A stretch of 64,000 bases of DNA from Macrostomum lignano (lineage: Eukaryota): the NCBI GenBank assembly GCA_002269645.1, contig NIVC01001808.1, forward strand, positions 130,383 to 194,382, in the 5' to 3' direction. The translations under genes were made by a program, and so were the position numbers. A model generated the notes under the pieces. The model had not been told where the DNA came from, ran no database searches, and saw nothing but the letters and a program-made list of their open reading frames with translations. Of this stretch, positions 239 to 56,989 are shown one piece after another. The stretch's first letter is position 1, and every line of letters begins with the position of its first letter.

Positions 239-1723
<1,485 letters not shown>

Positions 1724-1800: not shown

Positions 1801-3072
1801 GAGTGGAAGAGGGAGAATTATCCCCGAACTCAATGGGATGGGGAAAAGTGGAAGAGGGAGATTTATCCCCGAACTCAATGGGATGGGGAAAAGTGGAAGA
1901 GGGAGATTTATCCCCGAACTCAATGGGAAGGGGAAGAGTGGAAGAGGGAGATTTATCCCGAACTCAAAGGGAAGGGGAAAAGTGGAAGAGGGAGATTTAT
2001 CCCCGAACTCAATGGGAAGGGGAAGAGTGGAAGAGGGAGATTTATCCCCGAACTCAATGGGAAGGGGAAGAGTGGAAGAGGGAGATTTATCCCGAACTCA
2101 ATGGGAAGGGGAAGAGTGGAAGAGGGAGATTTATCCCGAACTCAATGGGAAGGGGAAAAGTGGAAGAGGGAGATTTATCCCCGAACTCAATGGGATGGGG
2201 AAAAGTGGAAGAGGGAGATTTATCCCCGAACTCAATGGGAAGGGGAAGAGTGGAAGAGGGAGATTTATCCCCGAACTCAATGGGAAGGGGAAAAGTGGAA
2301 GAGGGAGATTTATCCCCGAACTCAATGGGATGGGGAAAAGTGGAAGAGGGAGATTTATCCCCGAACTCAATGGGAAGGGGAAGAGTGGAAGAGGGAGATT
2401 TATCCCCGAACTCAATGGGAAGGGGAAGAGTGGAAGAGGGAGATTTATCCCCGAACTCAATGGGATGGGGAAAAGTGGAAGAGGGAGATTTATCCCCGAA
2501 CTCAATGGGAAGGGGAAGAGTGGAAGAGGGAGATTTATCCCCGAACTCAAAGGGAAGGGGAAAAGTGGAAGAGGGAGATTTATCCCCGAACTCAATGGGA
2601 AGGGGAAGAGTGGAAGAGGGAGATTTATCCCCGAACTCAATGGGAAGGGGAAGAGTGGAAGAGGGAGATTTATCCCCGAACTCAATGGGAAGGGAAGAGT
2701 GGAAGAGGGAGATTTATCCCCGAACTCAATGGGAAGGGGAAAAGTGGAAGAGGGAGATTTATCCCCGAACTCAATGGGATGGGGAAAAGTGGAAGAGGGA
2801 GATTTATCCCGAACTCAATGGGAAGGGAAGAGTGGAAGAGGGAGATTTATCCCGAACTCAATGGGAAGGGGAAAAGTGGAAGAGGGAGATTTATCCCCGA
2901 ACTCAATGGGATGGGGAAAAGTGGAAGAGGGAGATTTATCCCCGAACTCAATGGGAAGGGGAAGAGTGGAAGAGGGAGATTTATCCCCGAACTCAATGGG
3001 AAGGGGAAGAGTGGAAGAGGGAGATTTATCCCCGAACTCAATGGGATGGGGAAAAGTGGAAGAGGGAGATTT
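1801..3072 (+). repeat. 45-bp purine/G-rich minisatellite, ~28 units
   Basis: Unit AGTGGAAGAGGGAGATTTATCCCCGAACTCAATGGGAAGGGGAAA with 1-nt length variants. It explains the 15-aa periodic ORFs. Confidence 0.97.
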
Positions 3073-3648: not shown

Positions 3649-3819
3649 TCAGTGCTGCGAGCGCCGGTTCTGGCCTTCAAAGAACATGAAGTCCTGCAAT
3701 GATGTGGGTGCGATCTGTCTCACTGTCTGTCTGTCTGTCTGTCTGACTGTCTGACTGTCTGTCTGTCTGTCTGACTGTCTGACTGTCTGTCTGTCATGGA
3801 GCCTGTCTGTCTGTCTTAG

Positions 3820-3852
<33 letters not shown>

Positions 3853-3855
3853 TAG

Positions 3856-3915
<60 letters not shown>

Positions 3916-5881
3916 AGAGCTGCCATCTCACGATCAGAAAGCAGGCTGCCAGAACCACAGCTTTGATCTTGACGCTCAAATCTCGCGGAAAAGTGATGCC
4001 AAAGTTGTCAACGTCCGTGAAGTACTCCTGCAGCAGGTTGGTCCACTGCTTGGACACCCGGCCCACCTCCGTGCTGCCATCGTGCGACCTCAGCTGGAGT
4101 GAATTGTTGTTGACGAGGTGAAAATACAAAAGAATGGAATACCAAAAATGGAATATACCTGGTATCAATCAACGGAGTGATGCATATCAGTGCAGTGGAA
4201 AAAATAGAAACTGTGCATAGATCGAGACGGAGTGAAAATTTGTATTGAGTGGGAAGGAGGGTAGAGAATAGAATGCAGAGAGGGTGAATATTTTGGCGGG
4301 TGTGAAAGTACCAATAATGTGAATTATGTGAAGCTAATTGTTGCGAGAGACAAGAAGAGGCAGAAAATATCAATACGTACATGTATAGAGTGAAAATCTA
4401 CCCCTAGATAGAAGAAGGCAGGCACAAAGTGAAGACAACCAACATATAGAAAATTCCAGGGCAAAATATTCAATAAAGCAAATTGGTCTTTCACACTCTG
4501 ATACTCAAATAGCTGAAAGGGAACAGCTAGCAGCGCTTAACCGACGCACTGAGCGTTCCAGAAATAAGAGGAAAGCAGTTTTCACTTCAAAGCGGGGCCT
4601 TTCAAACCAACCCGATAGATGCACACTGTACCAACCCGACAGATGCACACTGCACCAACCCGATAGATGCACACTGCACCAACCCGACAGATGCACACTG
4701 CACCAACCCGATAGATGCACACTGCACCAACCCGATAGATGCACACTGCACCAAACCGATAGATGCACCAATCCGATAGATGCACCAACCCGATAGATGC
4801 ACCAACCCGATAGATTCACCAACCCGATAGATGTACCAACCCGATAGATCCACACTGCACCAAACCGATAGATGCACCAACCCGATAGATGCACACTGCA
4901 CCAAACCGATAGATGCACCAACCCGATAGATGCACCAACCCGATAGATTCACCAACCGATAGATGCACCAACCCGATAGATGTACCAAGCCGAAAGATGC
5001 ACACTGCACCAACCCGACAGATGCACCAACCCGATAGCTGCATACTGCATGTCATGTCAATCACACTACGTCATTGTTTCCTCAACGTGTTCTCTCCGAT
5101 CAAGCAGCTTCTGACAACTGCGTTCGCCAGTGCTGTGGACCGCAGCGCTCATTCGAGCTGTTTGTCGAGGACTACCAGGGCAACGAGGTGCTGCGCATCT
5201 CTAGGCCCTACAAGTGCGTCTGCTGTCACCAGGTCTGCTCCTGCGCCAACTGCTGCTTCGACGAAGTGTCAGTAGAGTCGCCGCCAGGCTGCTACATCGG
5301 ACGGGTTGTGCAGGCCTACGGCGGCTGCCGCCCGGTCTATCAAATCAAGGACGAGGCCGACGCTACTGTGCTGGTGGCGGAGGGGCCCATCTACACCAAG
5401 TGCTACTGCCCCGGAGACGATATACCTTTCACTGTGAGCTGAGAAGTGGGTGGGGAGTGTAGTGTGCATCTATCGGGTTGGTGCAGTGTGCATCTATCGG
5501 GTTGGTGCAGTGTGCATCTATCGGGTTGGTGCAGTGTGCATCTATCGGGTTGGTGCATCTATCGGGTTGGTGCATCTATCGGTTTGGTGCAGTGTGCATC
5601 TGTCGGGTTCAAAGCTACCAAATCAAATTAGGCTTGCCGCCGCGAAGCCTCAAGGAGCGCACTCACACTCTCTAGCGAAGAACACCTGCTGTCCAGTGGA
5701 GTTCTGCACGCTGTACCTGTTCTGCATCTCGAAGCCCGAAATGACTGCAAACAAAGGCGGCATGTTTCGGGTAAATGTTTGCTCATCAAAGCCAAAATTC
5801 AAGCCCAAAGGTCAGTCCGTTGGCGAATACGAACCCTCGAAAGTTTCCTTCTTCTGCTTGATGATGAGCTGGTCGAGCTGG
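3649..5881 (-). CDS. PLSCR: Phospholipid scramblase (PLSCR family). Minus-strand exons 5881-5835, 5744-5667, 4093-3932, 3693-3649; the central exon is on the plus strand; the N-terminal exon is not resolved
   Basis: Peptides QLDQLIIKQKKETFE|VISGFEMQNRYSVQNSTGQQVFFARE, LRSHDGSTEVGRVSKQWTNLLQEYFTDVDNFGITFPRDLSVKIKAVVLAACFLI|DFMFFE* match the scramblase consensus, including the FTDxDNFGIxF motif. All have GT-AG boundaries. Confidence 0.9.
3720..3912 (+). repeat. (GTCT)n microsatellite in the last scramblase intron
   Basis: Direct reading. Confidence 0.95.
4607..5037 (+). repeat. Minisatellite array A (24-bp ACCAACCCGATAGATGCACACTGC, with 17-bp variants)
   Basis: Direct reading; reverse complement of array B. 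Confidence 0.95.
5108..5433 (+). CDS. PLSCR: Central scramblase exon in inverted orientation
   Basis: CAG|CT TCT GAC AAC TGC...TTC ACT|GTGAGC encodes SDNCVRQCCGPQRSFELFVEDYQGNEVLRISRPYKCVCC...SPPGCYIGRVVQ...GDDIPFT. This is the segment missing between the minus-strand exons, and it is phase-compatible (1 and 0) at both ends. Confidence 0.92.
5458..5609 (-). repeat. Minisatellite array B, inverted copy of array A
   Basis: GCAGTGTGCATCTATCGGGTTGGT is the exact reverse complement of the array A unit. Confidence 0.95.
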
Positions 5882-6573
5882 CTATTTCCTATTGAATCTC
5901 TCTTGTGAAGACATTCCACCCTATTATATCGCTGCAGATTCAACTCCGCCTCACTGTGCGCAACGCTGGCCCAAGGAGATCTTATAGAATCTGGAGTAGC
6001 CACATCGGCTAACTAACTAAACTTCTACAGCTCATATTGGAGTCGCACTCCAGACTCTATTTATAGATGAAGATCGCCCTCGCCGAGCGGCCGGAGGGTC
6101 TGCTAGTCTTTTTTCACGATACAGAGAATGCAGCACAGACAATGTTCTTTCAATTTGTTTTTTTCATCTCTCTCTCTCTCTCTCTCCATATCCATCTCTA
6201 AACCTTTGCACCTGGCTACTCAAGAAAATAGCATTCGCTCAGCAGCTATTGTGTCTTTTGGAATCAACCGAGAGACGGAGGAGTGAAGGGGCGAGCAAAG
6301 AAGCTGCTCAACCAATTGAGGGTTGCCAGCCAGAGAAAAAATGCTTCTCTCCCTGCTGACGTCAAAGCTCAAATAGGCCAACGTGCCAAGCAAGCTGTTT
6401 AAGATATTTTCGCAACTAGCACGCTCTCTGCCAGTTCATTTTTCCCAAACTGACTGGTGCAAAAGTTGAATTTCGAACGTGTTGACCTTCTTTTACTTGG
6501 CTGATTCGGACACTGAATCCGAATGGCACCCAACGGAGTCAGTGACCGAAGCGCTAGGCTCCCGCGCTTGATC

Positions 6574-9500
6574 ATGATCAGAATTCTGCTGCTAGTTGCT
6601 ATGCAGGCCACTCTGTTCCCAGGTAAGAGTGCGCATCAAATTTCCGTATCCGCGTGCCTTTGTTGGTTGTTGATTTTTAACCAATTAATCTTAAGTAGAT
6701 GCTTGCGAACGCACTACGCTCGTATTGTCGAGAAAAGTTGAATTTTCTTGATGGATGGATTTAATGGAGGAAGTTTTCGGAGCAAGTGCGACCCCCTTTT
6801 TTCTGATTCTGTCGGGGATAATATGGATGGATTTAATGGGATTATGGAGGAGGTTAAAAAATTTGTCCCAAAAGCCCCCTCATGCCTTCTACTCAACAGA
6901 GTTCTGATGACTGCTCACCAAAAGTTTTTAAGAAGCAAAACTTTTCCATCTTCGATGCTGCTTCAAGGACCACTAGAAGTTACCATTATATCATTAAATC
7001 AGTTAGAAACCCTGGTCTGCTAAATTGTTGCAAGCTTTGATGAATATAGTAACTGTATGTACATATAAGCATGACAAGTTTTAAACGATCTGCAAGGACT
7101 TGCGTGTAATGACATAAATAAGTTTTACTTTAAATGTGCAGCTTTAACAGGTTAAAGCCTTAAAAATTACACACAAATCTATTTTGGAGCTAGTTCAGGT
7201 TTCCCAATCGAATCGAATATCAAATTGCCATCGATCTACTTTAAAAACAATATCGACACATTTCAGGTACTGCATTTGCCCAGCTAGCCTGGGATACATT
7301 CAGCCCAGCTCAGCAGACGTACCCAACCGCCACCGTCACGATAGACGAAAACATGGCGGCTACCACAACGGTGCTGACAATAACCACCACAGGGGCCACG
7401 GGCACCGTGACCTATTCGATTGCATCATCAACGACGGCTGCATTCACCATCGGGGCTTCCACAGGCGTGATTACGGTGAACGATGCGTCACTGCTTGACA
7501 GAGAAGCGATCTCCTTTATTGACTTGGTTCTGCAGGCGGTAGACACGTCTCCAGCAACGGTCTCAACTACAGTTCGGATCGATCTGAAAGATGTGAACGA
7601 GATTGCTCCAACTTTTTCGTCGACTTCAACTTACAGCGTTACCATCAGCGAAAGTGAGTCGAATTGGCGCAAATTCTATAAAAATATTTGGATATGAGTT
7701 ATACAAAGTAAACTTTGTCATTATTCCAGGTGCCACAGTGGGTACAACAATCCAAGCTCTAACGGTGACGGACACGGACAGCGCCGCGACAAACGTTGCG
7801 TGCACCATCAGCTCAGGTGACCCGGACGGCAAGTTCCAGTTTCGGTCGGACAATCAAACCATCGAGCTGAAGGCCGCCATCGAGCCGGACTCGCCGACAA
7901 ACAACAGCTTAACTTACACGCTCACCATCGTCTGCTATGACAATTTCAATGGTGTCTACAGCGGCGGCTCGCTCGCGTCGACTGGCACAGTGTCTGTCTC
8001 CGTGACGCCAGTGAATGACAACTCACCGACCTGGGGAACGTTCACTCCGGCTCTTGCTACTCCAATTACTACGATTGATGAGAATCTGGCCAGTGGAACC
8101 ATCTTTACCGCCGCTGCCTCGGATGTGGACTACGGAACTGACGGAGTCGTGACATTCAGCTTCTCGACAGTCAAGTTCAACACTGGAGCGGATGCCAGCG
8201 CTTTGTTCACGATTGGCTCCTCAAGTGGAGTAGTGTCCAGGACTGCAGCGACCACCCCGGCTCTCGACAGAGAGACATACAGCCACGTTGAGTTCGTTGT
8301 GCTAGCGATGGACAGCCCGACGGTTACAGCCGATCGGTTGACGATTACTCAGACAGTTCAAGTCAATCTCAAGGATGTAAACGAATTTACACCGGTATTC
8401 GACCCTTCAACTGGGCTATATAACGTTTCTTTCTCAGAGAGTGAGTGCTCATACTAGTTAACTATTCTTTTGGAAAACGCAACTCCTATGCATTTTATAA
8501 GACCATTTACAAATACCGGTGGTAGTAAAGGACGTGACATTTCAAAGTCATGAAATCTATAATGCATTAGCAAGAATTGGCCCTCCCACATAGAATAAAT
8601 CCAATATGCATATGATGAGTTTAATTGGGGATTGCTTTATGTACATGTACAAGGTTGTTCATTCTAGTTTTTTGTAGAATGCCAGGGACCTCTGTGATAC
8701 AGGATACCATTTCATGTATACCATAGATATCCATGATAAAAGGTATGCATAACATTAAATAAGATTTTACCACGCACAGCTATCATTATTTGTTTTCCAT
8801 TTTCAAGTGATATTTGGAATTCTTCTCAAAGGTGAGAAAATTGCCAATATTTTAAAGCGAAACACCTGGACCTTTAGATATGTTTTCCTTCATTAGAGGT
8901 GCTACTTCCACTTACTAACCAGTGGTTTCCGATAATTTAATCGTCCTTAATTTATTGACGCACAATCGTTATTCCTCAGCCGCTCCCGCCGGGACTCTGG
9001 TCCTAAACGTATCCGTGAGCGACCCGGACTTCTCGCGCACGGCCATATCCTGCACAATCACATCCGGGAACACGCTGGATCGATTTCAAATGCGCGCGGA
9101 TGGTACATCGTTGGAGCTGAAAACGCAGATCGAGCCGGATTCGCCCACCTCTGATCCTATAAACTATGTTCTTACCCTTTCCTGCGCGGATAATACTGCC
9201 GGTACTTACTCGGGCGGTCAGAAGTCCTCGACTGGAACGGTTACAGTTTGGGTCGAATATAACAATGACTACTCCCCAGTTTGGTCCACGTTTAGCCCGG
9301 CGTGGACATCGGCGACTACTCCGATTTCTACCATTCTGGAGAATCTGGCCGTGAATCAGACTGTATTTACAGCCAGCGCAACAGACGACGACGCTGGAGA
9401 CGATGGTCTAGTCGTCTACAGCATCTCAGGCGCAGTCGCGGAGAATGGGTCCTCAGTGATGGAGGCTTTCGCTATTAACGGTTCCAGTGGGGCAGTCAGC

Positions 9501-12500
9501 ATAGCTAATTCTACAGTGCTCGATCGCGAAGGCTACAGCTATGTTGATGTCACTGTAGAGGCTCGCGACTCGCCTGCATCTGGCACGACCTACACTATCA
9601 CGCAGACAGTTCGAATCGGAATATCGGATTATAACGAATTCCCGCCGGCTTTCACGCCTTCAACTGGACTTTACACACCTGCGATACCAGAAAGTGAGTA
9701 TAGCTACTGGTTTACAGACAGGTTTTCAACATCAGCTCTGCATCAAAAAGGGGTTTGTAGCTTAGTTAAGAGGTTGTAGCCTAGTGAAGGGGTTGTAGCC
9801 TTGTAGTGAAGGGATTGTAGCCTAGTAGTGAAAGGGTTGTAGCTTAGTGAAGGGGTTGTAGCCTTGTAGTGAAGGGATTGTAGCCTAGTAGTGAAAGGGT
9901 TGTAGCCTAGTGAAGGGGTTCTAGCCTAGTGAAGGGGTTGTAGCCTAGTGAAGGGGTTGTAGCCTAGTAGTGGAGGGGTTGTAGCCTAGTGAAGGGTTTG
10001 TAGCCTAGTGAAGGGGTTGTAGCCTAGTGAAGGGGTTGTATCCTAGTGAAGGGGTTGTAGCCTAGTGAAGGGGTTGTATCCTAGTGAAGGGGTTGTAGCC
10101 TAGTGAAGTTGTAGTCTAGTGAAGGGGTTGTAGCCTAGTGAAGGGGTTGTATCCTAGTGAAGGGGTTGTAGCCTAGTGAAGTTGTAGTCTAGTGAAGGGG
10201 TTGTAGCCTTGTAGTGAAGGGATTGTAACCTATTAGTGAAAGGGTTGTAGCCTAGTGAAGGGGTTGTAGCCTAGTGAAGGGGTTGTAGCCTAGTGAAGGG
10301 GTTGTATCCTAGTGAAGGGGTTGTAGCCTAGTGAAGTTGTAGTCTAGTGAAAGGGTTGTAGCCTAGTGAATGGGTTGTAGCCTAGTGAAGGGGTTGTAGC
10401 CTAGTGAAGTTGTAGTCTAGTGAAGGGGTTGTAGCCTAGTGAAGGGGTTGTATCCTAGTGAAGGGGTTGTAGCCTATTAGTGAAAGGGTTGTAGCCTAGT
10501 GAAGGGGTTGTAGCCTAGTGAAGGGGTTGTAGCCTAGTGAAGGGGTTGTATCCTAGTGAAGGGGTTGTAGCCTAGTGAAGGGGTTGTAGCCTTGTAGTGA
10601 AGGGATTGTAACCTATTAGTGAAAGGGTTGTAGCCTAGTGAAGGGGTTGTAGCCTAGTGAAGGGGTTGTAGCCTAGTGATGGGGTTGTATCCTAGTGAAG
10701 GGGTCGTAGCCTAGTGAAGGGGTTGTATCCTAGTGAAGGGGTTGTAGCCTAGTGAATGGGTTGTAGCCTAGTGAAGGGGTTGTAGCCTAGTGAAGGGGTT
10801 GTAGCCTAGTGAAGGGGTTGTAGCCTGGTGAAGGGGTTGTAGCCTAGTGAAGGGGTTGTAGCCTAGTAGTGGAGGGGTTGTAGCCTAGTGAAGCTGTAGC
10901 CTAGTGAAGGGGTTGTAGCCTTGTAGTGAAGGGATTGTAACCTATTAGTGAAGGGGTTGTAGCCTAGTGAAGGGGTTGTATCCTAGTGAAGGGGTTGTAG
11001 CCTAGTGAAGTTGTAGCCTAGTGAAGAGATTGTAGCCTTGTGGTTAGAGCGTTGGACTCTCAGCTTGTAGGTCAGGGGTTCGATTCCCGATCCAACTGAA
11101 ACAATTTGTGTCCTTGAGCAAGACACTTAACTCTGCATTGCTTCAGTTCACCCAGCTGTAAAATGGGTGCCAGCATTAGTTGAGGTAATTGAGGGTGGGT
11201 GTGGCGACCTCCCAGTCCTTGGACTGAACAGCTGTACGCAGCCTTCAGATGCGCCGCACAATAGCTGCGGCTGAGCTGTCGGTTGCACATCTGCTCATTA
11301 GGGCAGGTGTAATGTACAAGTACATATAGTATTATTCGTATATGTACCTGTGTGCGTAAATTAATTTGTATTTCTTTTAAACGTGTCCCAAATTCCAGCC
11401 ACGACAGCGGGCACCGCAGTGCAGACTATTGTTGCCACGGACCCGGACTACTCGAATACAGCAGTTGTGTGCGCCATTGCCGCTGGTAACAGTCTGAATC
11501 GGTTTGCAATCAACACGGCCGATAAGAAGCTTGTAGAGACCGCCTCCGTCATTCAGCCGGACAAGCCCACCCTCGATCCCACCATCTACCTTCTAACCGT
11601 GCACTGCGCCGATATGAACAACGGCACCCTGGGAACTCCAGTGCTGACATCGACAGCCTACATCACGGTCAATGTGACCCTCGTCAACGATTACGATCCG
11701 ACAATCACCCTGAACTCGACAACGATGGTGATCCCGGAAGACACCCCAGTATCCAGTTTCATTGTCAGTGTGACTGCGGACGACTTGGACTATGGAAATG
11801 ACGGTACTTTCACCATATCGCTGAGTCCAACAACACCGTTCGCGTATGTAGTACCATTATCTTGCTTCTACGTCGAAATCCTAAAATTTCTCCTTAGATT
11901 GAATTGAGTTATTACGCGTTCGATTAATTTCAGTTTAACCGGAGACCGAACAAAGCTTCTGCTGACAGAGGCTCTAGACAGGGAAACCAAGGATTCGTAC
12001 GTGATTGAAATGAGGGCACTGGATCAGGGGTCTCCAGCTAGGAGCAGCACCACAACGTTGACAGTCAGCATAACTGACGTCAATGATAACACACCTGTGT
12101 GCAGTCCCAACACGTACAATGTCAGCGTCACCGCGGACAGTGCAGCCACCCTAGTGGCAAGCATTCCTTGCACCGATGCCGATCTGGGTGACAACCAGCT
12201 ACTGGCCTATTCTTTTCTGTCGGGGGACACGCGAAATCTGACCCTTTCGTCTACCACTGGTAAGTCAGCGAGTTTTGCTTAAAAAAATATAACACAATCT
12301 ATATTCAACTCATATTGATAATTGGTCACATGACTTATCCAGGTGCCTTGACAACAACCTTTCTAACGTACGATTCCGCGGCGCCGTCCAAAACTCTGGT
12401 GATCACTGTGCGCGACAGCGCGACACCCGCCTCGGCGCAGCGCACAGCGACCGTCACAGTCACCGTGCACGTGCTGCCAAGAAACCTCGGCCCGCCAGTA

Positions 12501-15500
12501 TGGGGAACATTCAACCCGCCGTGGATAAGTGCCACTACCGCAATCAACTCGGTATCGGAGAATGCCGACGAAGGATTCGCAGTGTTCACCGCGGTTGCTA
12601 TTGACTACGACTCCGGGCCAGACGGTCAGGTGATCTACAGTCTGGCCTCAGTAACCGGTACGGACGGCACTACCAGCGTAGATCTCAGCTCCGTATTTAA
12701 TATCTCCAGCAGCTCTGGCCAGGTGCAGGTCAAGACTAAAGGCATCCTTGACCGAGAGGCGACGCCAGCCTACACCTACATCAACTTCGTTGTACAGGCG
12801 CGAGATAATCCCACCACTGGGACTCCAAACAGCATCATCCAGACTGTGCGGGTTGACGTTACGGACTTCAATGAGTTGGACCCAACGTTCACTGGCGATC
12901 CATTCTCTGCGACGCTTGTCGAAGGTAATTGGATAAATACAATGCAAAAAATTACTGTATGAAGACAAAAGTATTCATTTGTGCTTTTATTAAAAAATGA
13001 CTGAAATTTAATACCCGAAATTCAGATTCCGCCGCTGGAACTCTGGTGAAACAGATGGTTGTTTCGGATCCGGACAGCTCCAACACGATAATTACCTGCC
13101 AGATCACCAGTGGCAACGATCTAAGCCTGTTCCGCACAAACTCCGCCAACTCAACAATCATCGAACTGAACACAGCCATCGATCCGGACAGGCCGAAAAA
13201 TCATCCGCTTAGCTACCTGCTCATCGTCACGTGCTTGGATAATAATGGTGCTGGCAGTTACAGGACAGCAACAGCCAACCTCTCCGTAACCATCACTACA
13301 ACCAACGATCACACTCCAGTCGTATCGATACCGATTGGCAGTAGCATTACCTTGCCTGAAACCCAGGCTATCGGTGACGTTGCTGATATTAGCGTTGTTG
13401 ACCAAGACTACGGAACCGACGGCACAGTTGCGTGCTCGATAGCGCCTACTGGCACTTTTGGGTAAGTTTTGACAGGGAAAATTTTTTTGACTTCAATTTC
13501 CACCCATGAGGATCAACTCCGAAGGCAGAGTGTACATGTCTGACAAATAGAAAGTCAAGACCGCTGTACACCCTGTGGGAGCGTGTGTATAATTGCGTGC
13601 CTGAGTACAGTACACTTGTGCTCAGGAGTCAGCGGAATGTGCAGGATCGCATCACCGCTGGTCTTGGGGCGATTTAGCCAAAGATGTTATGTCAGAGTTT
13701 CCATATATATACACACATAGACGTATTGTATCACGCTTCGTATAATAAAAATAATTTAAAATTCATTAAACTATTGCAGGCTAACTGGCTGCACTAAGCT
13801 AACGCTCGTCTCAGGCTTGGACTATCCAACGGCCAGCTCCTACTCGCTAACTATCACGGCTGTCGATAGCGGGGCAACGCCGAGAACTGGCAGCGTCGTG
13901 GTGACAGTGACAGTGACCGACGTGAATCGCTACACGCCGTCCTGTTCGCCGGCGACTTACTCGGCTTCTGTATTGGAAACAGCAGCCAGCTTCCCAACGG
14001 CTCTGACGCCAGCCACAACCATCACCTGCACAGATGGGGATGGCAACGGGGTTTACTATCAGCTAGTAGACAGTTCTGTACCTTTCTCCGTAAACAACTT
14101 GACAGGTGTCCTGTCCCTCAACGGGCCAGTTGACTACGATAGCGCAGTACAAACGTATACGATACTTATTCGAGCGGTTGATCCGGCTGACTCATCCAAA
14201 TCGGGTCTGGCTACAGCAACTGTGGCTGTGACTGCCGCTAACGAGTTCACGCCGACGTTTCCTACGGCCACTGTCACGCTGTCGGTGTATGAGACCGTAG
14301 CCAGCTCCACGACGATAACGACATTCGCGGCGACCGATGCTGACTACTCACCGCATGCGATCACCAGCTACGCGATCGCATCAGGCAACACTGGCGGGAT
14401 GTTTGCAATCAGTAACGCTGGTGTCATCACGGTGGCTTCAGGCATGACGATCGATTACGAAGCTGTCTCCGGAAGTTCGCCCTATGTTTTGCAGATTGTG
14501 GCAACAGATGGTGGAGGCCTAACAGGTACAGGGACGATTAGTATCGTTATCCTGGACTCGAACGACCTGCCTCCAGTCTTTAGCCCAGCAAACTACTCCG
14601 CCAGTGTCCCCGAGGGCTCGGCTGCAGGTACCACCGTCACCACGGTAACCGCCACTGACGGCGACACGGCGCTGAACAATAACAACAAGATATTGTACTC
14701 CAAGCTAACTGGAGACTCGGCGGGCTATTTCAGTGTCAATTCTACCAATGGATTAATATTAACAACTGGTAATATACTGAACTACGACACCGTAACGCAA
14801 GTGGTCTTCACGGTGAGCATAACTATTTTTAATTTTTATAATTTCCGACGATACATTGTATTCATAAAGATTAGATGTTAAATTATAAACCATCAGACAT
14901 ACAGTTTATGTAGCTATTATACAAATAATCCAGTAGATTTATCTGAGGCCATATATTACTTATGTTAGAAACGATTCTACAGTAAGAATCGAGTTTAGGT
15001 ATTCTACAGAAAAGTGGTAAAAAAATCGAATTACAGGTCACAGCAGTGGATGGCAACGGTGCTGGACCACACACTGCCACAACTACAGTCACAGTCGCTG
15101 TTACGGATGTAAATTTACACGCACCAAGCTGCAGTCCAAGCACAGTCACGGTGAATAACATCCGTGAAGACGTTACAGTTGGTACTGCTCTCACCAGTCT
15201 GACTTCGCCGGTTGTGATTTGCACTGATGGCGATGCCAAAGACACCCTGACCTACACAATGAGTGCCAGTGCATCTGACAGCCACTTTGCAGTCAATCCG
15301 ACCAGCGGCGCAATCACTGTGTCCACTGCTCTGGACTTTGAAACCGCTAGAATCCATCAGTTTGAAGTAGTAGTCACTGACAGCGCTACTCCGGCCAAGT
15401 CGGTCAGTATGGCGGTGACCATCAATGTACTTGATGTTAACGAATTCAGCCCAACCTGCACAGTGCCAACAACCGCGTCCATGAATGAGGCTCAAGCAGT

Positions 15501-18500
15501 TGGTACCGCTGCCTACTCTGCAACTAGTTGCAGCGACTCAGACGGCACTGCAACAACGCTACAGTTCGCTCTAGTGCCCGGCACCCCGTTTCAAGTCAGC
15601 TCATCCGGAGCCGTCACTGCCAGCAGCGCACTGGATTATGATCCAGCCAGTGCCACCACCAGCTACTCAGTGCGTCTGATTGTGTCAGACAATGCACCCA
15701 CGATCAGCTCTCTCAGGTCCAGTACTTACACAACCGTTGTCTCGGTGACACCTGTTAATGAGTTTGCACCGGTGCTCACCTACACGGCTCTCACTGCTAG
15801 TCTAGCTGAGGATTCGGGAACAGGGACAGCACTAGCTTTGAAAACTATCGGTGGTACGAGCGTCTCAATGGCGGCAACTGACGCCGACCGAGGCCTGAAT
15901 CACGCCACCCTGACCTGGTCCATTGTTGGTGGAAATGACGCCGGTAAATTTTCGATCAATTCGGCTTCGGGAGCGCTACAAACAGCCGCGGCACTGGACA
16001 GAGAGACAGCCGCCAGCTACACGCTTCTGGTTAGCGTAACAGATGGAGGCGGCCTCTCTTCCACTGCTAACTGCACCGTGGCCGTCTCAGTGACTGACAT
16101 CAATGATAACACGCCAGTTTGCAATCCAGCTTCTCAGACCATCACCCTGTATGAGGGCGAAGCGGCCAAACAGCTGGTAGACTTCGGTGCATCGGGCAGA
16201 GTTACCGACGCTGACTCTGGAGTTAACGCGCAGCTGACCTTCAGTCTAAACAATGCGGGTAAGAAGAGCACTGTTTGATATTATTGCCATAATTATCCGC
16301 TATCATAATGAGTGAACTAACAAAAGAAACTCCACAATCTGATTTCAGCTGCTCTGAGCCCAGACTTCCAGCTTAGTGGCACTCGTCTCAGTAGCGTGCG
16401 CAGCTTCAGTTCGTCCGATACCCTATCAAACACGCTTTTAGTTGTAGCTACAGATGGTGGCAGCTCCGCTCGATCAGCCACTTGCTCTGTGACGGTTAAC
16501 ATAGCCGTCACAGCTAGGCCGCCTACATTTACAGTTGCAAACAGCGCTGTCACAGTGTCCGAGAGCTCTTCAGTGGGCACTCAGGTATTTCAATTTGTTC
16601 CCAACTTGGGCACTGGTGGAACAGGACCGCTTACAATGTCACTTGTCGACTTCTCTCCATCTGCGAATTCGAATCTGTTTGCGTTCGATGCCTCAACTGG
16701 CCGAGTTTCAGTAAACCAGGCGTTGGACTATGACTCAAGCTCAACAAGGGTCCCTTTGTCCTGATGGTAAAAGTAACCGACGCCACACCTCTAACTGCGT
16801 CGGGCACTCTGACCATCAGCCTGACTGACGTCAACGACAATGATCCACAGTTTGGATCTACTGTGGAGTTCACAAAAACTATAGACGAAAATGTTGGTTC
16901 CGCCTTTTTGACCCAAACCATCACCTGGACTGATGCTGATTCCGGCTTAAGCGGAATTGCAAACTGCTCGATTGTGGGGCAGTCCACGCCGGCGATTTTC
17001 ACCATCGACGCGACCAACTGTCAGCTGAAGACGACTGCCAATCCCGACCGAGAGAACTGCAGCCTGCACAATATCACTATCGCGCTTACCGACATGGGTA
17101 CCCCGCAGCGCACAACTCAAAGAAGCTTTTTCATCACGATTGCTGATCAAAACGACAACACTCCAGCTTTTGCTTCGGCCTCTTTTGCCGCCTCTGTAGC
17201 GGAGGAGTCAGCGCCGTCTACCACTGTTGGCACCTATGCTGCAACCGATGCAGACGCCGGTGTAAACGCCCAGCTAACGTACTCCCTCACGTCTCAGGAC
17301 GGCATTTCGGACGCGTCTAAGTTTACAGTATCTAGTGCCGGGGCTGTGACAACGGCGGCCACGCTCGACCGCGAACAGTTCGGCGTCTATCGCCTGTTGC
17401 TGCTTGCAAAAGATGGCGGGTCGCCACCACGCACGGGTACCACAACCCTTGTAATCACCGTTAATGATATCAACGAACACACGCCGTTGGTAAGACTTTT
17501 AAGTAGTACTCGTATATTTAAAAAATAACTGAATCTTTCGTTTGATCCAAATTAATTTTAAATGTATTGGACTGCTTAAAAAACAAATTTACTTACAACT
17601 CTTTCTATTGCAGTTCTCAGGCCTACCCGACACGGTGAAACTGGTGGAGAACTCCACGGCGGGCACGCTAGTGTACACCATCGCCGCTACTGACCGAGAC
17701 TCAACCTATGGCGCACTCACGTACAGCATCATTGACGGCAATAATAGCACCGCGTTCGCTATCGATGCCAGCACTGGCCAAGTGACCGTGGCCTCGCCTG
17801 TAACTCTCAATCGGGAGGCCATACCAGTTTACCAGCTTGTGGTGCAGGTTCAGGACAACGGTTCGCCAGCTAAATCGGCCACGTCAACTCTCACCGTGTC
17901 CGTGATGGATGTCAACGAGTTTGCACCTAGTTTTGCGTCCCCGACTGTTAGTTTCTCGGTAAGACGATTTATTGCCTTCATTCCTGTGTAGTACACATGT
18001 CTCTAAAAGACTCAACTTGACTATTTTGTTTTTCCTATCGTTCAGATTGCCGAAAACTCCCCGGTGGGCAGCACTCTAGGAACTGTAACTGCCACAGACA
18101 GTGACGGCCCGAGCCAGACAGTAAGCTATGCTGTTGCTGCCACTTTAGTGGGCACGGCCGGCCACTTTAGCGTCAACAGCGTCACTGGAGTGGTATACGT
18201 CAATCAGGCGGCTCTCGACCGAGAGACTCTGGCAACCTACGTGCTGCAAATTGCCGCCTACGACAATGGAGTTCCTTCTCTGACGTCTTCTCCGCTGTTG
18301 AATGTAACCATCTCTATCACGGACACCAACGACAACGATCCCGTCTTCAGTGCAGCCTACTACAACGCCTCAGTTAGTGAGAGTCTAGCTATTGGCTCGG
18401 TGGTGCTGACCGTGTCAGCGACGGATCAAGACGCCGGCAGCAACGCTGCGTTGACCTACTCGCTGCATTCGTCAGCAACGACAGCGAGTACATTTTTCTC

Positions 18501-19894
18501 GATCAATTCTGCCACAGGACAGCTAAGCACTATTGCAGCTCTGGACTACGAGACTAACACGGACTTTCTGTAAGCCAGTGCACATCTTTGTTACTCTACT
18601 TTGTTTTGAGTTAATTCCAATACATAATCCAACAGTACCATGCACTAAAAACCGTAACAACCGAATTGAATCACGCAGCTTCACCGTCATGGTCAAAGAC
18701 GCTGGAACGTCGCCTCAGCGCAGCTCCACAGCCAGCGTCTGGGTGTCTCTGAACAACGTGAACGAGCACCGGCCAGTGTTTGCCTCGACATTCTACAACT
18801 GCGAGGTGCCGTACAACGACGATACGCGAGCGATTCTGGCGACGCTGACCGCCACAGACGCCGACGCGGGGACTTTCGGTACGATAACGTCGTACAGTTG
18901 GAATAGTACAAACATCTACTTGTATCTGGGCGCAACTAGCGGTCAAGTGATTCGAAACTCCGATCAAGTCATGGAGCGCAACAAAAAGTACATCCAGTAC
19001 GCGATGGCCACCGACGGCGGAGGCCTAGTGTCCACGCAAAATGCCACAGTTCGCTGCGACTCCTTCCCGCCTGAGGACTACGTGGTGCTAATCTACACAG
19101 AGTTGTCAGAGAGCAGCTTCAACATGATGCTGACCAGCCTCACCGCCAGTCTGAACTCCACGCTGCAGGATGTCCACCCGGGCAGCTCAGTGAGGTTCTG
19201 GAAAAAGCAGAAGTCTGGAATCTACTGGGTTGGCTACTTCTATGCTCTAAGCAGCCTTAGCACTGATAGCATCTCCAATATTGGCCAGGACAAAGAATTC
19301 CTGACCCAGTCTCAACTGTTGGACAAGTGGCGACTTAAGTCAGACGGGACACCTACCAGCGTCCTCACGAGCAGCAGCTTCAGCAACTACCGGGTCAACA
19401 AAGTGGAGCCGTATCCAGACTCCGACAGTGACGCGTCAACAAACTGGTTGGATACGTGGTGGGGCAAACTCTGCCTGGCTCTGGGGGCCGCCGCCGGCGT
19501 TGCTTTGATTGGCGCCCTTGTCTACGGCTTGGTTAACGCATGCGGCGGCGCCGGGGCTGGCGCGTCTGCCGCTGCGCCGACGGCTGCAGCAGCCGGCCAG
19601 ACCACGGTAGCTCCGGCGGCTGGAGTCGGCGGCGGCAAAGCGACCAGTCAGCTGGCCCGGCAGCCCATGAACCAGCGGCACCTCCTGCCCAATTCGCAGC
19701 AGCAGCCGAAGCCGCCGCAACGATTCCAAGACACGCCGAGGCCGGACTTTAACGACAAGCAACAACAACAGCAGCAGCAGCAGCAGAAGCAGAACAACTC
19801 CAATAACAGGCAGAATCAGAACCAATCCAGGCAGAGTAACAACGATTCTGGCCGGGGCAGCGCCGCATCCGACGTTGTGATCTTTGAGCTTTGA
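6574..19894 (+). CDS. Large non-classical cadherin (~3,043 aa, ~25 EC repeats, membrane-proximal module, TM, Q/N-rich tail). 14 exons: 6574-6622, 7267-7653, 7730-8440, 8980-9693, 11399-11843, 11934-12259, 12343-12924, 13026-13461, 13780-14812, 15037-16258, 16349-17489, 17614-17958, 18046-18569, 18679-19894
   Basis: Signal peptide MIRILLLVAMQATLFPG; repeated DRE/DYE, DxD and DxNDN/DxNE-xP motifs; TM LCLALGAAAGVALIGALVYGLV. All introns are GT-AG and phase-consistent. The exons sum to 9131 nt, one short of a multiple of 3, which matches a frameshift near 16750. Confidence 0.92.
9750..11025 (+). repeat. 19-bp minisatellite (GTAGCCTAGTGAAGGGGTT), ~65 units, in cadherin intron 4
   Basis: Direct reading; runs directly into a SINE head. 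Confidence 0.96.
11026..11312 (+). mobile_element. tRNA-derived SINE, copy 1
   Basis: A-box-like TAGCCTTGTGG, B-box GGTTCGATTCC (11077-11087), central GTGTCCTTGAGCAAGACACTT...CAGCTGTAAAATGGGTGCC domain. Highly similar copy at 21000-21275. Confidence 0.85.
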
Positions 19895-25948: not shown

Positions 25949-40796
<14,848 letters not shown>

Positions 40797-43920: not shown

Positions 43921-46900
43921 GGTATAGGACTAGCAATCAGCGCCCCCCGTTGGGGAGCCAAAAAATACAGCACAAGTTTTTGAATAAACTACATATAAGC
44001 GTCTCTTTGCATTATACCTCAGCAACCCCTTGTAAGCCTTGACATGCCAGCAATTCCTCCCCCCCCCCACAAGCCTTAGCATATCAACTCCCCCTTGACA
44101 TCTTAGCAATTCCCCCCATAAGCCTTGAAATCTTAAAAAATCTGTTAACCTTCTAAACCTAACCCTAACCCTAACCCTAACCTTAAAGCATTGACATTTC
44201 AGTAATTCTCTCCGAGAGTCATTATAGCACTACAGCATTATAGCGATTCCCTGCAAGCCTCGACATCGTAGGGATTCCCAAATGAATCTCTTAACTTCGA
44301 CATGAAGCTTCTTTTATTTTTTACATTACACTTTATCTATCAGCGATCCTTCCCGTGAAGAGCCAACAAATAATGAAAACATTTTTCAATAAACTACATC
44401 ATCTACATGTAGCTTGTGAATTTAGCCTTGATATCTCGGTTATTCCCCCGTGAGCCTTGACATCTCAGCTATTCCCCCCGTAAGCCTTGACATGTTAGCG
44501 ATGCCCCCCATAAACCTTGATATCTGAAAAATCCCCTGTTAATCTTGAAACCCGCTAAAATCTAACCCTCAACCCAAACCTGACCTAAACCTAACTTTAA
44601 CCCAACCTAAAGCCTTGAATCTCAGCAATTCTTCTCCCCTAAGCCTTGACATTTTAGTGATTCCTTTTTTAAGAATCACAGCACCATAGCGATTCCCTCC
44701 AAGCCTTGGCATCGTAGCAATTCCCAAATGAATCTTTTAACTTTGACATAATGACTCTTCTTTTATGTACACATAGTGCTTCTTCTCTTTTTTACATGAC
44801 TCTTCTTCTATCAGCGCCCCCTCCCCCGTAGCGAGCCAACAAAGAATGTAATAAAAAATTGAGTAAACTACATGTACTTTGAAGTAGCTTCTGACGTTTG
44901 CTATTTTGCTTCTCTGGCATCTCAGAAACCCCCTCCCCATAATCTCAGTTATTCTCCGTGAGCCTTGACATCTTAGTAATTCTCCCCAGCACAGCACAAT
45001 AGCTTCTTTTAATTTTTACATGACACTTCTTTCATGTCTGACATGACGCTTCTATGATTTCTCAAATGACACTTCCATTAGTTTTTATATGAGGCTTCTA
45101 TGATCTTTTGATGACGCTTCTATGATTTTTTACATGACGCTTCTATGATTGTTTGCATGACGCTTTTATGATTTTTAAATGACGCTTCTATAATTGTTTA
45201 CATGACGCTTCTATGATTGTTTACATGACACTTCTATGATTATTTACAAGACACTTCTATGATTGTTTGCATGACGCTTCTATGATTTTTTCATGACGCT
45301 TTTATGATTTTTACATGACGCTTCTATGATTGTTTACATGACGCTTCTATGATTGTTTATATGACGCTTCTATGATTTTTTTAAATGACGCTTCAATGAT
45401 TGTTTATATGACGCTTTAGTGATTGTTTACATGTCGCTTCGATGATTTTTTACATGACGCTTCTATGATTGTTTACATGACACTTCTATGATTGTTTACA
45501 TGATGCTTCTATGATTGTTTACATGACGCTTCTATGATTTTTTACATGACGCTTCTATGATTTTTTACATGACGCTTCTATGATTGTTTGCATGACGCTT
45601 CTATGATTTTTTCATGACGCTTCTATGATTGTTTGCATGACGCTTCTATGATTTTTTCATGTCGCTTCTATGATTTTTATATGACGCTTCTATGATTGTT
45701 TACATGACGCTTCTATGATTGTTTACATGACACTTCTATGATTTTTATAAGACGCTTCTACGATTTTTTACATGACGCTTCTATGATTCTTTTCATGACA
45801 CTTCTATGATTTTTTACATGACGCTTCTATGATTTTTTCATGACGCTTCTATGATTTTTACATGATGCTTCTATGATTTTTTCATGACGCTTCTATGATT
45901 TTTTACATGACGCTTTTATTATTTTTACATGACGCTTCTATGATTTTTTAAATGACGCTTCTATGATTGTTTATATGACGCTTCTATGATTGTTTACATG
46001 ACGCTTCTATGTTTGTTTACATGACGCTTCAGTGATTGTTTACATGACGCTTCAGTGATTGTTTACATGACACTTCTATGATTGTTTATATGACGCTTCT
46101 ATGATTGTTTACATGACGCTTCTATGTTTGTTTACATGACGCTTCAGTGATTGTTTACATGACGCTTCTATGATTGTTTACATGACGCTTCTATGATTGT
46201 TTACATGACGCTTCTATGATTGTTTACATGACGCTTCAGTGATTGTTTACATGACGCTTCAGTGATTGTTTACATGACACTTCTATGATTGTTTACATGA
46301 CGCTTCTATGATTTTTTACATGACGCTTCTATGATTGTTTACATGATGCTTCTATGATTGTTTATATGACGCTTCTATGATTTTTTTAAAAGACGCTTCT
46401 ATGATTGTTTATATGACGCTTCTATGATTTTTTTAAATGACGCTTCAATGATTGTTTATATGACGCTTCAGTGATTGTTTACATGTCGCTTCAATGATTT
46501 TTTTACATGACGCTTCTATGATTGTTTACATGACACTTCTATGATTGTTTACATGACGCTTCAGTGATTGTTTACATGACGCTTCAGTGATTGTTTACAT
46601 GACACTTTTATGATTTTTACATGATGCTTCTATGATTGTTTACATGACACTTCTATGATTGTTTACATGACGCTTCTATGATTTTTTCATGATGCTTTTA
46701 TGATTTTTACATGACGCTTCAATGATTGTTTACATGACGCTTCTATGATTGTTTATATGACGCTTCTTTGATTTTTACATGACGCTTCTATGATTGTTTG
46801 CATGACGCTTCTATGATTTTTTACATGACGCTTCTATGATTGTTCTACGATTCTTTACATGACGCTTTTATGATTTTTGACATGACGCTTTTATGATTTT

Positions 46901-47520
46901 TACATGACGCTTCTTTTTAAAAAGTCTTTTAGTTTTCCTGACATTGAAAAGGTTTAATTAAAAAAATTCCACTCTATGAAAATTCGAACCACCGTCGCTG
47001 CATTTAGCAGTTCAGTTTGTTCACCTCTAGGCTAGCTCTCATCGTTTTGATAACATCAAATTTTGCACTTATATAATTCAACACTTTAAAATCCAAGCAT
47101 AGAGTAAATCACACGAAGCAGTTATGACATAATCAGTTTCTCAGTCAGTCAGTATCAGTTAACAATATGGTTACGCAATTTAAATCAAGTCTGGTGCTAC
47201 GCTTCCACACTGCATTTTCAATTCAAGTCGGAGTTACAATTCAGTTATGATGCAATCTATTTCAGAATCAGAATTCAACCAGTCAGTTTTTTCTCTAGCA
47301 TTCTTACAATGCATTTCAAGTCGAAAGAGCTGCTTGACCTTTGCAAAAAAGCATGTTTTTTGAATATTTAATGCCTTTAGCATCGAGCAATTTCTTAGCC
47401 ACGATGCATGTACAGTCACGGGAAAATTTCTGATCGAACAGTGCAAGTCTCATGAAAATCGGTCCAGCCATTTTTTTTTCTAATCGATTACAAGCAAGCA
47501 AGATTTTCATTTTTAGTATA
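43921..47520. mobile_element. Composite repeat element, copy 1 (GC-palindromic head, CCCTAA tract, 23-bp satellite, tRNA-like segment, conserved tail)
   Basis: Same module order as 47521-49515; 46915-47500 is near-identical to 48895-49490. Confidence 0.7.
45040..46915 (+). repeat. 22/23-bp satellite (CATGACGCTTCTATGATTGTTTA), ~80 units
   Basis: Direct reading. Confidence 0.96.
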
Positions 47521-56340: not shown

Positions 56341-56989
56341 AGATTAGGAAAGTTCGGGAGGACAGAGCAGGGCGGAGCAAGTGACACAAGTGAGCATGCT
56401 TTTTAAAGGAGTTTGCCGACCTTTGCATCCGTCAATTTGCTCTGAAGGTGGCTATTGTATGTGTAAGCGGTATACTGACTCAATAAACCGGGCGGGGCAT
56501 TTGGTGTTTACTATTAACGTTGTATTGAACTGCAGAACTAAATTAATATTCTTGGTTTATGCTTTAGAAGATTTAAAAAGGGTGCTGTAAGATGGCTGTC
56601 AGCTCCACCTTGTTATTGGGAGGAGTCGTATAGCGCAGAATCGAGGGCTGAATTATCCAGCTACGGCTTTAGATTTTGTGTTGAGCCTGAACGGAGAGAA
56701 GACAGATGGCAATTTTTTGCTAAGGAAAGGAAAGAGAAGGCGTCGCCATTACCAGTTTATCAATGATGCGCATGAAATTCTATACCAATACCCGTCCTTT
56801 TCATGAGATGCTGCAAGTTCCTTGCATGGAATCGGCAGGATCCAGAGACAGAAATTTGCGAGACAAATGCAGCCACATAAGAAAGAGAAATAGCTGAATG
56901 GGGTGTATGAAACTTGCGAGACGGAAGCAAAAAGCGTCCTTAGCTCACTTTTTCTGGCTTTTTGGCAGCCTCATCAGGTTTAGGAATCT

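What the first reader, a model, noticed from the sequence alone, without database searches (positions are those of the whole stretch)
3649..5881. Scramblase gene whose central exon sits on the opposite strand, bracketed by inverted minisatellite arrays
Four scramblase exons read on minus, but the exon that belongs between exons 2 and 3 (5108-5433, including the Cys-rich CVCCHQVCSCANCC motif) reads on plus. Its splice sites are intact and in phase with both neighbours: FFARE T|CT (phase 1) and PFT|LRSHD (phase 0). Array A (4607-5037) and array B (5458-5609) are reverse complements, the substrate for a flip by homologous recombination. Neither the flipped exon nor the others show coding decay. 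Possibilities: a recent or polymorphic knockout allele, a recurrent repeat-driven ON/OFF exon switch, trans-splicing from opposite strands as in Drosophila mod(mdg4), or a misassembly across the inverted arrays. The sequence alone cannot decide between these.
Basis: partly seen in the sequence, partly recalled or inferred. Interest (0 to 1): 0.88.

Follow-up and report, generated by a model that had tools for sequence, protein, structure and literature searches.

The report
Scramblase gene copy broken by inversion
One of several near-identical copies of a flatworm (Macrostomum lignano) scramblase gene has its central exon flipped by a sub-kilobase inversion and also lacks its 5' end, so it is most likely a young disabled duplicate in a recently polyploid genome rather than a switch or a trans-spliced gene.

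Summary
Four scramblase pieces read on the minus strand. The 326-nt central exon (5108-5433) reads on the plus strand with intact, in-phase splice sites. It lies between two reverse-complementary 17/24-nt minisatellite arrays (4606-5049 and 5457-5609).

The window is Macrostomum lignano, a neopolyploid whose genome is mostly present as three ~98% identical copies. Two gene models from this species (P0004, P0121) carry the same gene in collinear order, with only two amino-acid differences. So an intact-order sister copy exists.

The first 51 codons, including the start and the conserved GLEYL motif, are absent from the whole window. Homology stops at 5881/5882, 641 nt from a divergent cadherin gene.

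Skipping the flipped exon shifts the frame. One inversion with a breakpoint inside a single intronic array explains both the flipped exon and the inverted arrays, so the arrays may be the scar rather than the cause. The array geometry is wrong for eri-6/7-type trans-splicing.

Best reading: a structurally disabled duplicate. Misassembly and recurrent flipping are not excluded, because the sister copy's DNA and raw reads could not be reached.

The parts
5835..5881 (-). 3' remnant of scramblase exon 1 (…SQLDQLIIKQKKETFE). Homology to the paralogs and to the sister copy ends at 5881/5882.
   Evidence: in the paralogs exon 1 runs uninterrupted from the ATG through this stretch
5667..5744 (-). Scramblase exon 2 (VISGFEMQNRYSVQNSTGQQVFFARE), donor GTGAGT, ends in phase 1. 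The diagnostic codon ACT (T) at 5695-5697 is N in the collinear sister.
5610..5666 (-). 57 nt of unique intron between the exon 2 donor and array B
5457..5609 (-). Array B: 153 nt. In unit sense on the minus strand it reads one partial 24-mer, two 17-mers, four 24-mers.
5434..5456 (+). 23 nt flanking the donor of the flipped exon (GTGAGC…)
5108..5433 (+). Central scramblase exon X: 326 nt, 108 codons plus 2 nt, including the Cys-rich CVCCHQVCSCANCC stretch, on the opposite strand. All 108 aa are identical to the sister copy.
5050..5107 (+). 58 nt flanking the acceptor of the flipped exon (…gatcaagCAG)
4606..5049 (+). Array A: 444 nt. Six 24-mers, then a more degenerate stretch rich in 17-mers.
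4094..4605 (-). Unique AT-rich intron sequence (GC 0.40) between array A and the next exon
3932..4093 (-). Scramblase exon after X (LRSHDGSTEV…AACFLI), acceptor CAG in phase 0, donor GTGAGA. The diagnostic codon CGA (R) at 3983-3985 is Q in the sister.
3714..3912 (.). (TCTG)~50 microsatellite filling most of the last intron
3649..3693 (-). Last scramblase exon (DFMFFEGQNRRSQH, stop)
5882..6522 (.). 641-nt unique spacer where the missing 5' part of exon 1 and the promoter would be expected. It holds no scramblase coding sequence.
6523..19894 (+). Divergently oriented multi-exon cadherin-repeat gene. The putative ATG at 6523 is followed by a signal-peptide-like start.

Best explanation
This is one of the roughly three near-identical subgenomic copies of a phospholipid scramblase gene in the neopolyploid flatworm Macrostomum lignano, and this copy is structurally broken.

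A sub-kilobase inversion turned the 326-nt central exon onto the other strand. The inverted segment is either 4606-5456 or 5050-5609; the sequence alone cannot tell the two apart. One breakpoint fell inside an intronic 17/24-nt minisatellite. That split the array into two halves that now face each other, so the inverted arrays are most simply the scar of the inversion rather than a pre-existing recombination substrate.

The copy also lacks the first 51 or more codons, including the start codon and the conserved GLEYL motif.

Cis-splicing therefore cannot produce a scramblase. Skipping the flipped exon shifts the frame and gives a stop 27 codons later, and the antisense of the exon is full of stops. 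Function is presumably supplied by the collinear sister copies and by at least six other scramblase paralogs.

The exons show no point decay because the copies are too young for it to show, at ~1-2% divergence.

Shown: the anatomy, the collinear sister models, the frameshift, and the missing 5' end.
Inferred: that the inversion is real in the DNA, that it is fixed in this copy, and that it arose as a single event splitting one array.
For: - Anatomy and reading frame.
- Species and gene family: seven distinct M. lignano scramblase clusters.
- Collinear sister: P0004 and P0121 read exon 1-2-X-3 in order, with only T->N and R->Q differences. P0121 also maps to window 1564-1442 and 858-559, so it is a syntenic sister locus. 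It differs by 3 more substitutions in 41 residues there, so it is probably not the same DNA sequence.
- Genome context: ~85% of the DV1 genome is in 3 paralogous copies, with SNP rates of 2.2% overall and 1.1% in CDS. [quoted passage not shown] The two copies of paralog P0001 encode identical proteins but differ by a 3.9-kb intron indel.
- Second lesion: residues 1-51 of the sister, and any P-x-GLEYL motif, are absent from all 64 kb on both strands. Nucleotide homology to the paralogs' single exon 1 stops exactly at 5881. The 'acceptor' there is TAG, while the species consensus and the four clear acceptors of this gene are CAG. Only 641 nt separate it from a divergent cadherin gene.
- Loss of function: frameshift on skipping.
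- Single-array origin: the unit is found nowhere else in the window. Rejoining B's inner end to A's outer end restores a continuous run of ten 24-mers, in register to within 1-2 nt.
- Unlikely to be an artefact of short-read assembly: multi-kb minisatellite arrays are traversed throughout the window. The published assemblies of this species are PacBio-based.
Against: - No reads and no DNA of the sister copy could be obtained, so the orientation in real molecules is unverified.
- The collinear models come from an assembly of the same inbred line. Polyploid assemblies of this genome are described as error-prone.
- The window's source assembly could not be identified.
- The 5' truncation is inferred from absence. 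A lineage-specific intron longer than 58 kb, or an unrecognised alternative first exon, is not formally excluded.
- The two single-inversion variants and a recombination between pre-existing inverted arrays all predict the same present sequence.
- With only ~1% divergence between copies, the lack of point decay cannot discriminate a dead copy from a live one.
Confidence: 0.6

Rival explanations
1. Assembly artefact. In the real DNA the exon is collinear, and the orientation of the ~0.4-kb segment between the two arrays (or the arrays themselves) was mis-resolved in a difficult, triplicated, repeat-rich region.
For: Collinear gene models exist for a ~99% identical locus in an assembly of the same inbred line. 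The literature calls the assemblies of this polyploid error-prone, with collapsed or expanded copies. Tandem repeats make up 15% of the genome and hampered assembly.
Against: The whole structure is ~1 kb, far shorter than PacBio reads, and the window traverses arrays of up to 1.9 kb, so it is a long-read assembly. Long-read assemblers do not invert a segment unless reads carry the inversion. The structure is not the palindrome that a missed-adapter read would give, because the 407 nt between the arrays is unique. The collinear models differ by substitutions and keep the 5' exon that this copy lacks, so they most likely describe another copy.
Confidence: 0.13
2. Recurrent flip. The two inverted arrays pre-existed and act as substrates for homologous recombination, so the exon toggles between collinear and inverted states in the germ line or soma (a polymorphic or reversible state).
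For: The arrays are 153 and 444 nt, with arms up to 101 nt at 98% complementarity. The splice sites of the flipped exon are intact. A strong intramolecular stem is predicted for a single strand, MFE -543 kcal/mol over 1036 nt. Whatever created them, the arrays can now support re-inversion.
Against: This copy lacks its start codon and first 51 codons, so the 'ON' state would still not be a normal gene. Two inverted arrays of a locally unique unit need an earlier rearrangement anyway, so this model needs more events than a single array-splitting inversion. No orientation data are available. The one sister-copy pair examined at DNA level showed indels but no inversions.
Confidence: 0.15
3. Functional rescue by RNA. 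The plus-strand exon is transcribed separately and joined to the minus-strand exons by trans-splicing, as in eri-6/7 or mod(mdg4).
For: Splice sites are intact and in phase on both sides. M. lignano has very active spliced-leader trans-splicing machinery. A precedent exists for an inverted gene part rescued by trans-splicing (PMC11414722).
Against: An internal exon would need two trans-splicing events and its own plus-strand promoter. In eri-6/7, direct repeats give complementary RNAs; here the repeats are inverted, so the intron after exon 2 and the intron before exon X both carry unit-sense arrays and cannot pair, and the same holds for the second junction. The 5' end is missing. SL addition at 5881 would place the SL's ATG out of frame. 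A collinear sister copy makes rescue unnecessary.
Confidence: 0.03

Closest known systems
Gene-disrupting inversions between inverted repeats (e.g. F8 intron-22 inversion, IDS/IDS2 inversion in humans; own knowledge)
   Same: Part of a gene is turned round relative to the rest, and the inverted segment is bracketed by inverted repeats. The result is a null allele with no point mutations.
   Different: The scale here is ~0.5-0.9 kb rather than tens to hundreds of kb. The repeats are halves of a minisatellite, not segmental duplications, and may be the product of the inversion rather than its substrate.
C. elegans eri-6/7 (Sci Adv 2024, PMC11414722)
   Same: An ancestral single gene exists in both collinear and part-inverted configurations within one species. 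Repeats flank the inverted part.
   Different: In eri-6/7 the inverted part is the 5' module with its own promoter. It is flanked by direct repeats (ex-Polinton TIRs) that let opposite-strand RNAs pair, and only one trans-splice is needed. Here the inverted part is a single internal exon, the repeats are inverted and give no pairing, two junctions would be needed, and no transposon is involved.
Drosophila mod(mdg4) opposite-strand trans-splicing (own knowledge)
   Same: Exons of one protein are encoded on both DNA strands.
   Different: In mod(mdg4) the opposite-strand exons are alternative 3' terminal exons with their own transcription units. Here the exon is a constitutive internal one.
Post-polyploidy loss of redundant gene copies in M. 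lignano subgenomes (PMC10733133)
   Same: The species has three ~98% identical copies that differ mostly by structural changes, and this locus has a near-identical collinear sister.
   Different: That paper describes genome-wide statistics. A single-exon inversion that splits an intronic minisatellite is not described there.
Foldback-type elements with terminal inverted arrays of short subrepeats (own knowledge)
   Same: Two inverted arms are built of tandem short units of unequal length.
   Different: The 'loop' here is a conserved host exon with its own splice sites, at the position it holds in every paralog. The unit is not dispersed in the window.

Membership tests
Phospholipid scramblase (Pfam PF03803) | Significant match to the family profile over the whole domain | tested here: met
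   The joined exons score E 3.9e-65, 219.7 bits against a cut-off of 25.4, covering profile positions 20-220 of 221. The closest relatives are M. lignano scramblases at 72-74% and 99% identity.
Phospholipid scramblase (Pfam PF03803) | Complete gene: start codon and the N-terminal part of the domain (…CPxGLEYL…) present and collinear | tested here: not met
   Residues 1-51 of the sister model are absent from the window. There is no GLEYL-like motif on either strand. The central exon is on the opposite strand.
Invertible segment driven by recombination between inverted repeats | Inverted repeats of high identity bracket the segment | tested here: met
   Arms reach 101 nt at 98% complementarity, and the arrays are 444 and 153 nt.
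Invertible segment driven by recombination between inverted repeats | Both orientations occur at the same locus | not testable with these tools
   Only protein models of a collinear sister are available. No reads or sister DNA could be fetched.
Site-specific invertase switch (Hin/FimB/FLP type) | A dedicated recombinase and short specific recombination sites | tested here: not met
   No recombinase was found among the larger ORFs scanned. The only integrase is part of a Ty3/gypsy pol ORF 24 kb away. The repeats are ordinary minisatellite units.
eri-6/7-type trans-splicing rescue | Repeats are oriented so that the two opposite-strand pre-mRNAs carry complementary intron sequence next to the donor and acceptor to be joined | tested here: not met
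   The arrays are inverted in the DNA, so both RNAs carry same-sense units beside each pair of sites (geometry worked out from the sequence). eri-6/7 uses direct repeats.
eri-6/7-type trans-splicing rescue | The inverted part has its own promoter, and chimeric mRNA is detected | not testable with these tools
   No RNA data are available. No full-length protein of this gene was found in the protein collection.
Processed (retro-) pseudogene | Loss of introns, poly(A) tract | tested here: not met
   Introns sit at the same positions as in paralogs P0001/P0002.

The most novel reading that the evidence does not exclude
The inverted minisatellite halves make the exon a reversible element. Recombination or template switching between the arrays flips it back and forth in the germ line or soma, so copies of this scramblase toggle between coding and non-coding states. 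Alternatively, plus-strand transcripts of the exon, flanked by complementary arrays, are back-spliced into a circular RNA.
Probability: 0.06. Interest if true: 0.75.

Novelty: new member of a known kind. Interest (0 to 1): 0.3.

Why it matters
If the reading is right, this is a clean, base-resolved example of how redundant gene copies are lost soon after genome doubling. They are lost by small structural accidents in repeat-filled introns, before any point mutation accumulates.

It also carries a caution. Inverted repeats bracketing an inverted segment are usually read as the cause of the inversion, but here they may simply be the two halves of one array cut by it.

In practice, it warns annotators of M. 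lignano that homology-based gene models can miss or mis-join such copies. It also supplies two diagnostic codons for telling this copy from its intact sister in read or RNA data.

Tried and rejected
- Fetching the sister copy's DNA failed by every route. P0004 is not on record as a called gene. Its cluster holds only UniProt/UniParc entries without contigs. The cadherin neighbour returned only a 66% hit from another organism. The downstream part of P0121 returned only contig-less UniRef models.
- Exact look-ups of the exon-X ORF and of a SAP-domain ORF, meant to find independent assemblies or identify the source assembly, found nothing.
- I tested whether 5882-6526 or the unique intron part 4094-4605 is a dispersed repeat or transposon. 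Each matches only itself in the window and in three other M. lignano loci.
- I tested whether the minisatellite unit is a dispersed family that could have inserted twice. It occurs only in the two arrays.
- A dN/dS-style argument from the sister copy was rejected. Only 5 aa differences in 332 aligned residues is too little divergence to tell relaxed from maintained constraint (with rates).
- SL trans-splicing at 5881 as a way to supply a start codon was rejected. The SL's terminal ATG would be out of frame and would hit a stop in exon 2.
- I tried to decide between the two single-inversion variants from unit order. Joining B to A's outer end gives a continuous run of ten 24-mers, in register. 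The other variant is 2 nt off register. Both junctions are 24-mer to 24-mer, so this is a slight preference, not a decision.
- A processed pseudogene and a foldback-transposon insertion were considered and rejected (see the membership tests).

Full report
**1. What is in the sequence**

- On the minus strand lie four scramblase pieces: 5835-5881, 5667-5744, 3932-4093 and 3649-3693 (ending in a stop).
- The stretch that belongs between the second and third pieces, 5108-5433, is on the plus strand.
- Every junction is canonical. Exon 2 ends in phase 1 with donor GTGAGT. The plus-strand exon has acceptor …caagCAG and donor GTGAGC. The next minus exon starts in phase 0 after …ctcCAG.
- Joined in the order 1-2-X-3-4, the pieces give one open 220-residue frame. 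It matches Pfam Scramblase at E 3.9e-65, covering profile positions 20-220 of 221.
- tblastn of that protein against the window finds the central exon on the plus strand (E 1e-72) and no second scramblase copy.

The exon is bracketed by two arrays of a 17-nt unit (CCAACCCGATAGATGCA) and its 24-nt variant (the same unit plus CACTGCA).

- Array A is 4606-5049 in unit sense on the plus strand. Array B is 5457-5609 in the reverse complement.
- Inverted arms reach 101 nt at 98% complementarity.
- The unit occurs 21 + 6 times in the window, only in these two arrays, against 0 expected by chance.

**2. Whose genome, and is there a normal version?**

[quoted passage not shown] There are seven distinct scramblase clusters, with paralogs at 72-74% identity and one cluster at 99%.

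That 99% cluster holds two gene models:
- P0004 (UniProt A0A1I8GLT5, 160 aa).
- P0121 (a 1449-aa fused model).

Both read exon 1, exon 2 and the 'flipped' exon in one collinear chain, and P0121 continues through the following exon. They differ from the window by only two residues, T->N and R->Q.

P0121's non-scramblase continuation maps to window 1564-1442 and 858-559 on the minus strand, so it describes a syntenic locus. It carries three more substitutions in 41 residues there, so it is probably a sister copy and not the same sequence.

This fits what is published:
- About 85% of the DV1 genome is present as three paralogous copies. SNP divergence is 2.2% overall and 1.1% in CDS. [quoted passage not shown]
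- Both public assemblies are PacBio-based and built from the same inbred line. Tandem repeats make up 15% of the genome (PMC5730564).
- The paralog P0001 illustrates the pattern. Two contigs of GCA_002269645.1 encode the identical protein but differ by a 3.9-kb insertion in intron 2 and by array lengths.

**3.

In the paralogs, exon 1 runs without interruption from the ATG through …CPxGLEYLSxLDQxLIKQKKEFFE.

- In the window, nucleotide homology to that exon begins exactly at 5881.
- The 51 residues that precede it in the sister model (MDSNR…CPRGLEYL) are found nowhere in the 64 kb on either strand. Neither is any P-x-GLEYL-like motif.
- The AG in front of 5881 is TAG. The four clear acceptors of this gene, and the enriched M. 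lignano acceptor motif, are CAG.
- The next 641 nt are unique sequence. They run into the ATG (6523) of a divergently oriented, multi-exon cadherin gene.

So this copy most likely lacks its promoter, its start codon and the first part of the scramblase domain. An unrecognised alternative first exon cannot be formally excluded. Spliced-leader addition at 5881 would put the leader's terminal ATG out of frame.

**4. Consequences**

- If the minus-strand transcript skips the flipped exon, exon 2 (phase 1) meets the next exon (phase 0). The frame shifts and stops after 27 codons.
- The antisense of the exon has stops in all frames.
- In a single strand, array B is predicted to pair with the outer 24-mer run of array A as a ~150-bp stem (MFE -543 kcal/mol for 1036 nt; no shuffle control at this length).

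Cis-splicing therefore cannot give a scramblase from this copy.

**5. How it arose**

Tandem arrays grow in place. Two arrays of a locally unique unit, in opposite orientation on either side of a 407-nt segment, therefore already imply a rearrangement.

One inversion with a breakpoint inside a single intronic array and the other in the neighbouring intron yields exactly the present order. There are two variants:
- Segment 4606-5456 flipped. The array was originally in intron 2, which is the large, array-rich intron in the paralogs.
- Segment 5050-5609 flipped. The array was originally in intron 3, and intron 2 is restored to 57 + 58 = 115 nt.

The first variant rejoins B's four 24-mers to A's six 24-mers in register to within 1-2 nt. 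The second is 2 nt out of register. This is a slight preference only.

On this reading the inverted arrays are the scar of the inversion rather than its cause, although they could now mediate re-inversion. Recombination between pre-existing inverted arrays predicts the same present sequence but needs an extra earlier event. Only the sister copies' DNA can decide.

The absence of point decay is uninformative. With ~1% divergence between copies, only a handful of changes are expected in 615 coding nucleotides whether or not selection still acts.

**6. Rivals**

- **Misassembly.** This is the main technical rival, because collinear models exist from the same line and these assemblies are known to be error-prone. 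Several points argue against it. The ~1-kb structure is far shorter than long reads. The window traverses arrays of up to 1.9 kb. The structure is not a missed-adapter palindrome. The collinear models differ by substitutions and by having the 5' exon.
- **Recurrent flipping.** This is physically possible given the arrays, but the 'ON' state would still lack a 5' end.
- **Trans-splicing rescue.** The best precedent is C. elegans eri-6/7. There the inverted 5' module is joined through RNA pairing of direct repeats derived from Polinton TIRs (PMC11414722). Here the repeats are inverted. The intron after exon 2 and the intron before the flipped exon would therefore both carry unit-sense arrays and cannot pair, and the same holds at the second junction. 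Two trans-splices and a plus-strand promoter would also be needed.

**7. Verdict**

In the setting of a neopolyploid genome with three copies of nearly everything, a structurally disabled duplicate is an ordinary outcome. The array-splitting geometry and the untouched coding sequence make it a neat example but not a new kind of system.

Interest is 0.3. The most novel reading still open is reversible flipping, or circular-RNA formation from the array-flanked exon. I put that at about 6%.

Noticed in passing
L003 11342-12807 and 13432-13776 (paralog P0002, GCA_002269645.1 NIVC01000092.1): In a 72%-identical paralog, the homologous central exon (12981-13325) is also flanked on both sides by arrays of one 30-mer family. 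There the arrays are in direct orientation and the exon is collinear. Same-family arrays in both introns around this exon have therefore arisen more than once, and how is unexplained.
   Followed up: partly
window 6079-6093 (minus strand): A five-residue match, RPLGE, to residues 33-37 of the collinear sister model lies ~200 nt upstream of 5881 on the correct strand, but the flanks do not match. It could be chance or a relic of the lost part of exon 1.
   Followed up: partly
window 320-574, 1143-1428, 1801-3072, 3714-3912, 9748-11042, 36517-37964, 45002-46914, 56989-58144: The window is packed with micro- and minisatellites. They include a perfect (ACT)95, a 45-mer x28, (TCTG)~50 filling the last scramblase intron, and a 19-mer x67 inside the cadherin gene. 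This is consistent with the 15% tandem-repeat content reported for the species.
   Followed up: no
L001 10466-14382 vs L002 10466; L001 14757-15374: Two sister copies of paralog P0001 encode identical proteins but differ by a 3.9-kb insertion in intron 2. A single-exon ribosomal protein L18a gene sits antisense inside that intron.
   Followed up: partly
window 6523-19894 (+): A large multi-exon cadherin-repeat (FAT/CELSR-like) gene sits head-to-head with the scramblase remnant. No annotated M. lignano protein above 66% identity was found for its N-terminal part.
   Followed up: partly
window 29333-33331 (-): An uninterrupted 1332-aa Ty3/gypsy-type pol ORF (protease, RT, RNase H, integrase), probably a young LTR retrotransposon.
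   Followed up: no
window 46164-47492 and 48140-49472: A direct duplication of ~1.3 kb at 89.7% identity, next to a long minisatellite.
   Followed up: no
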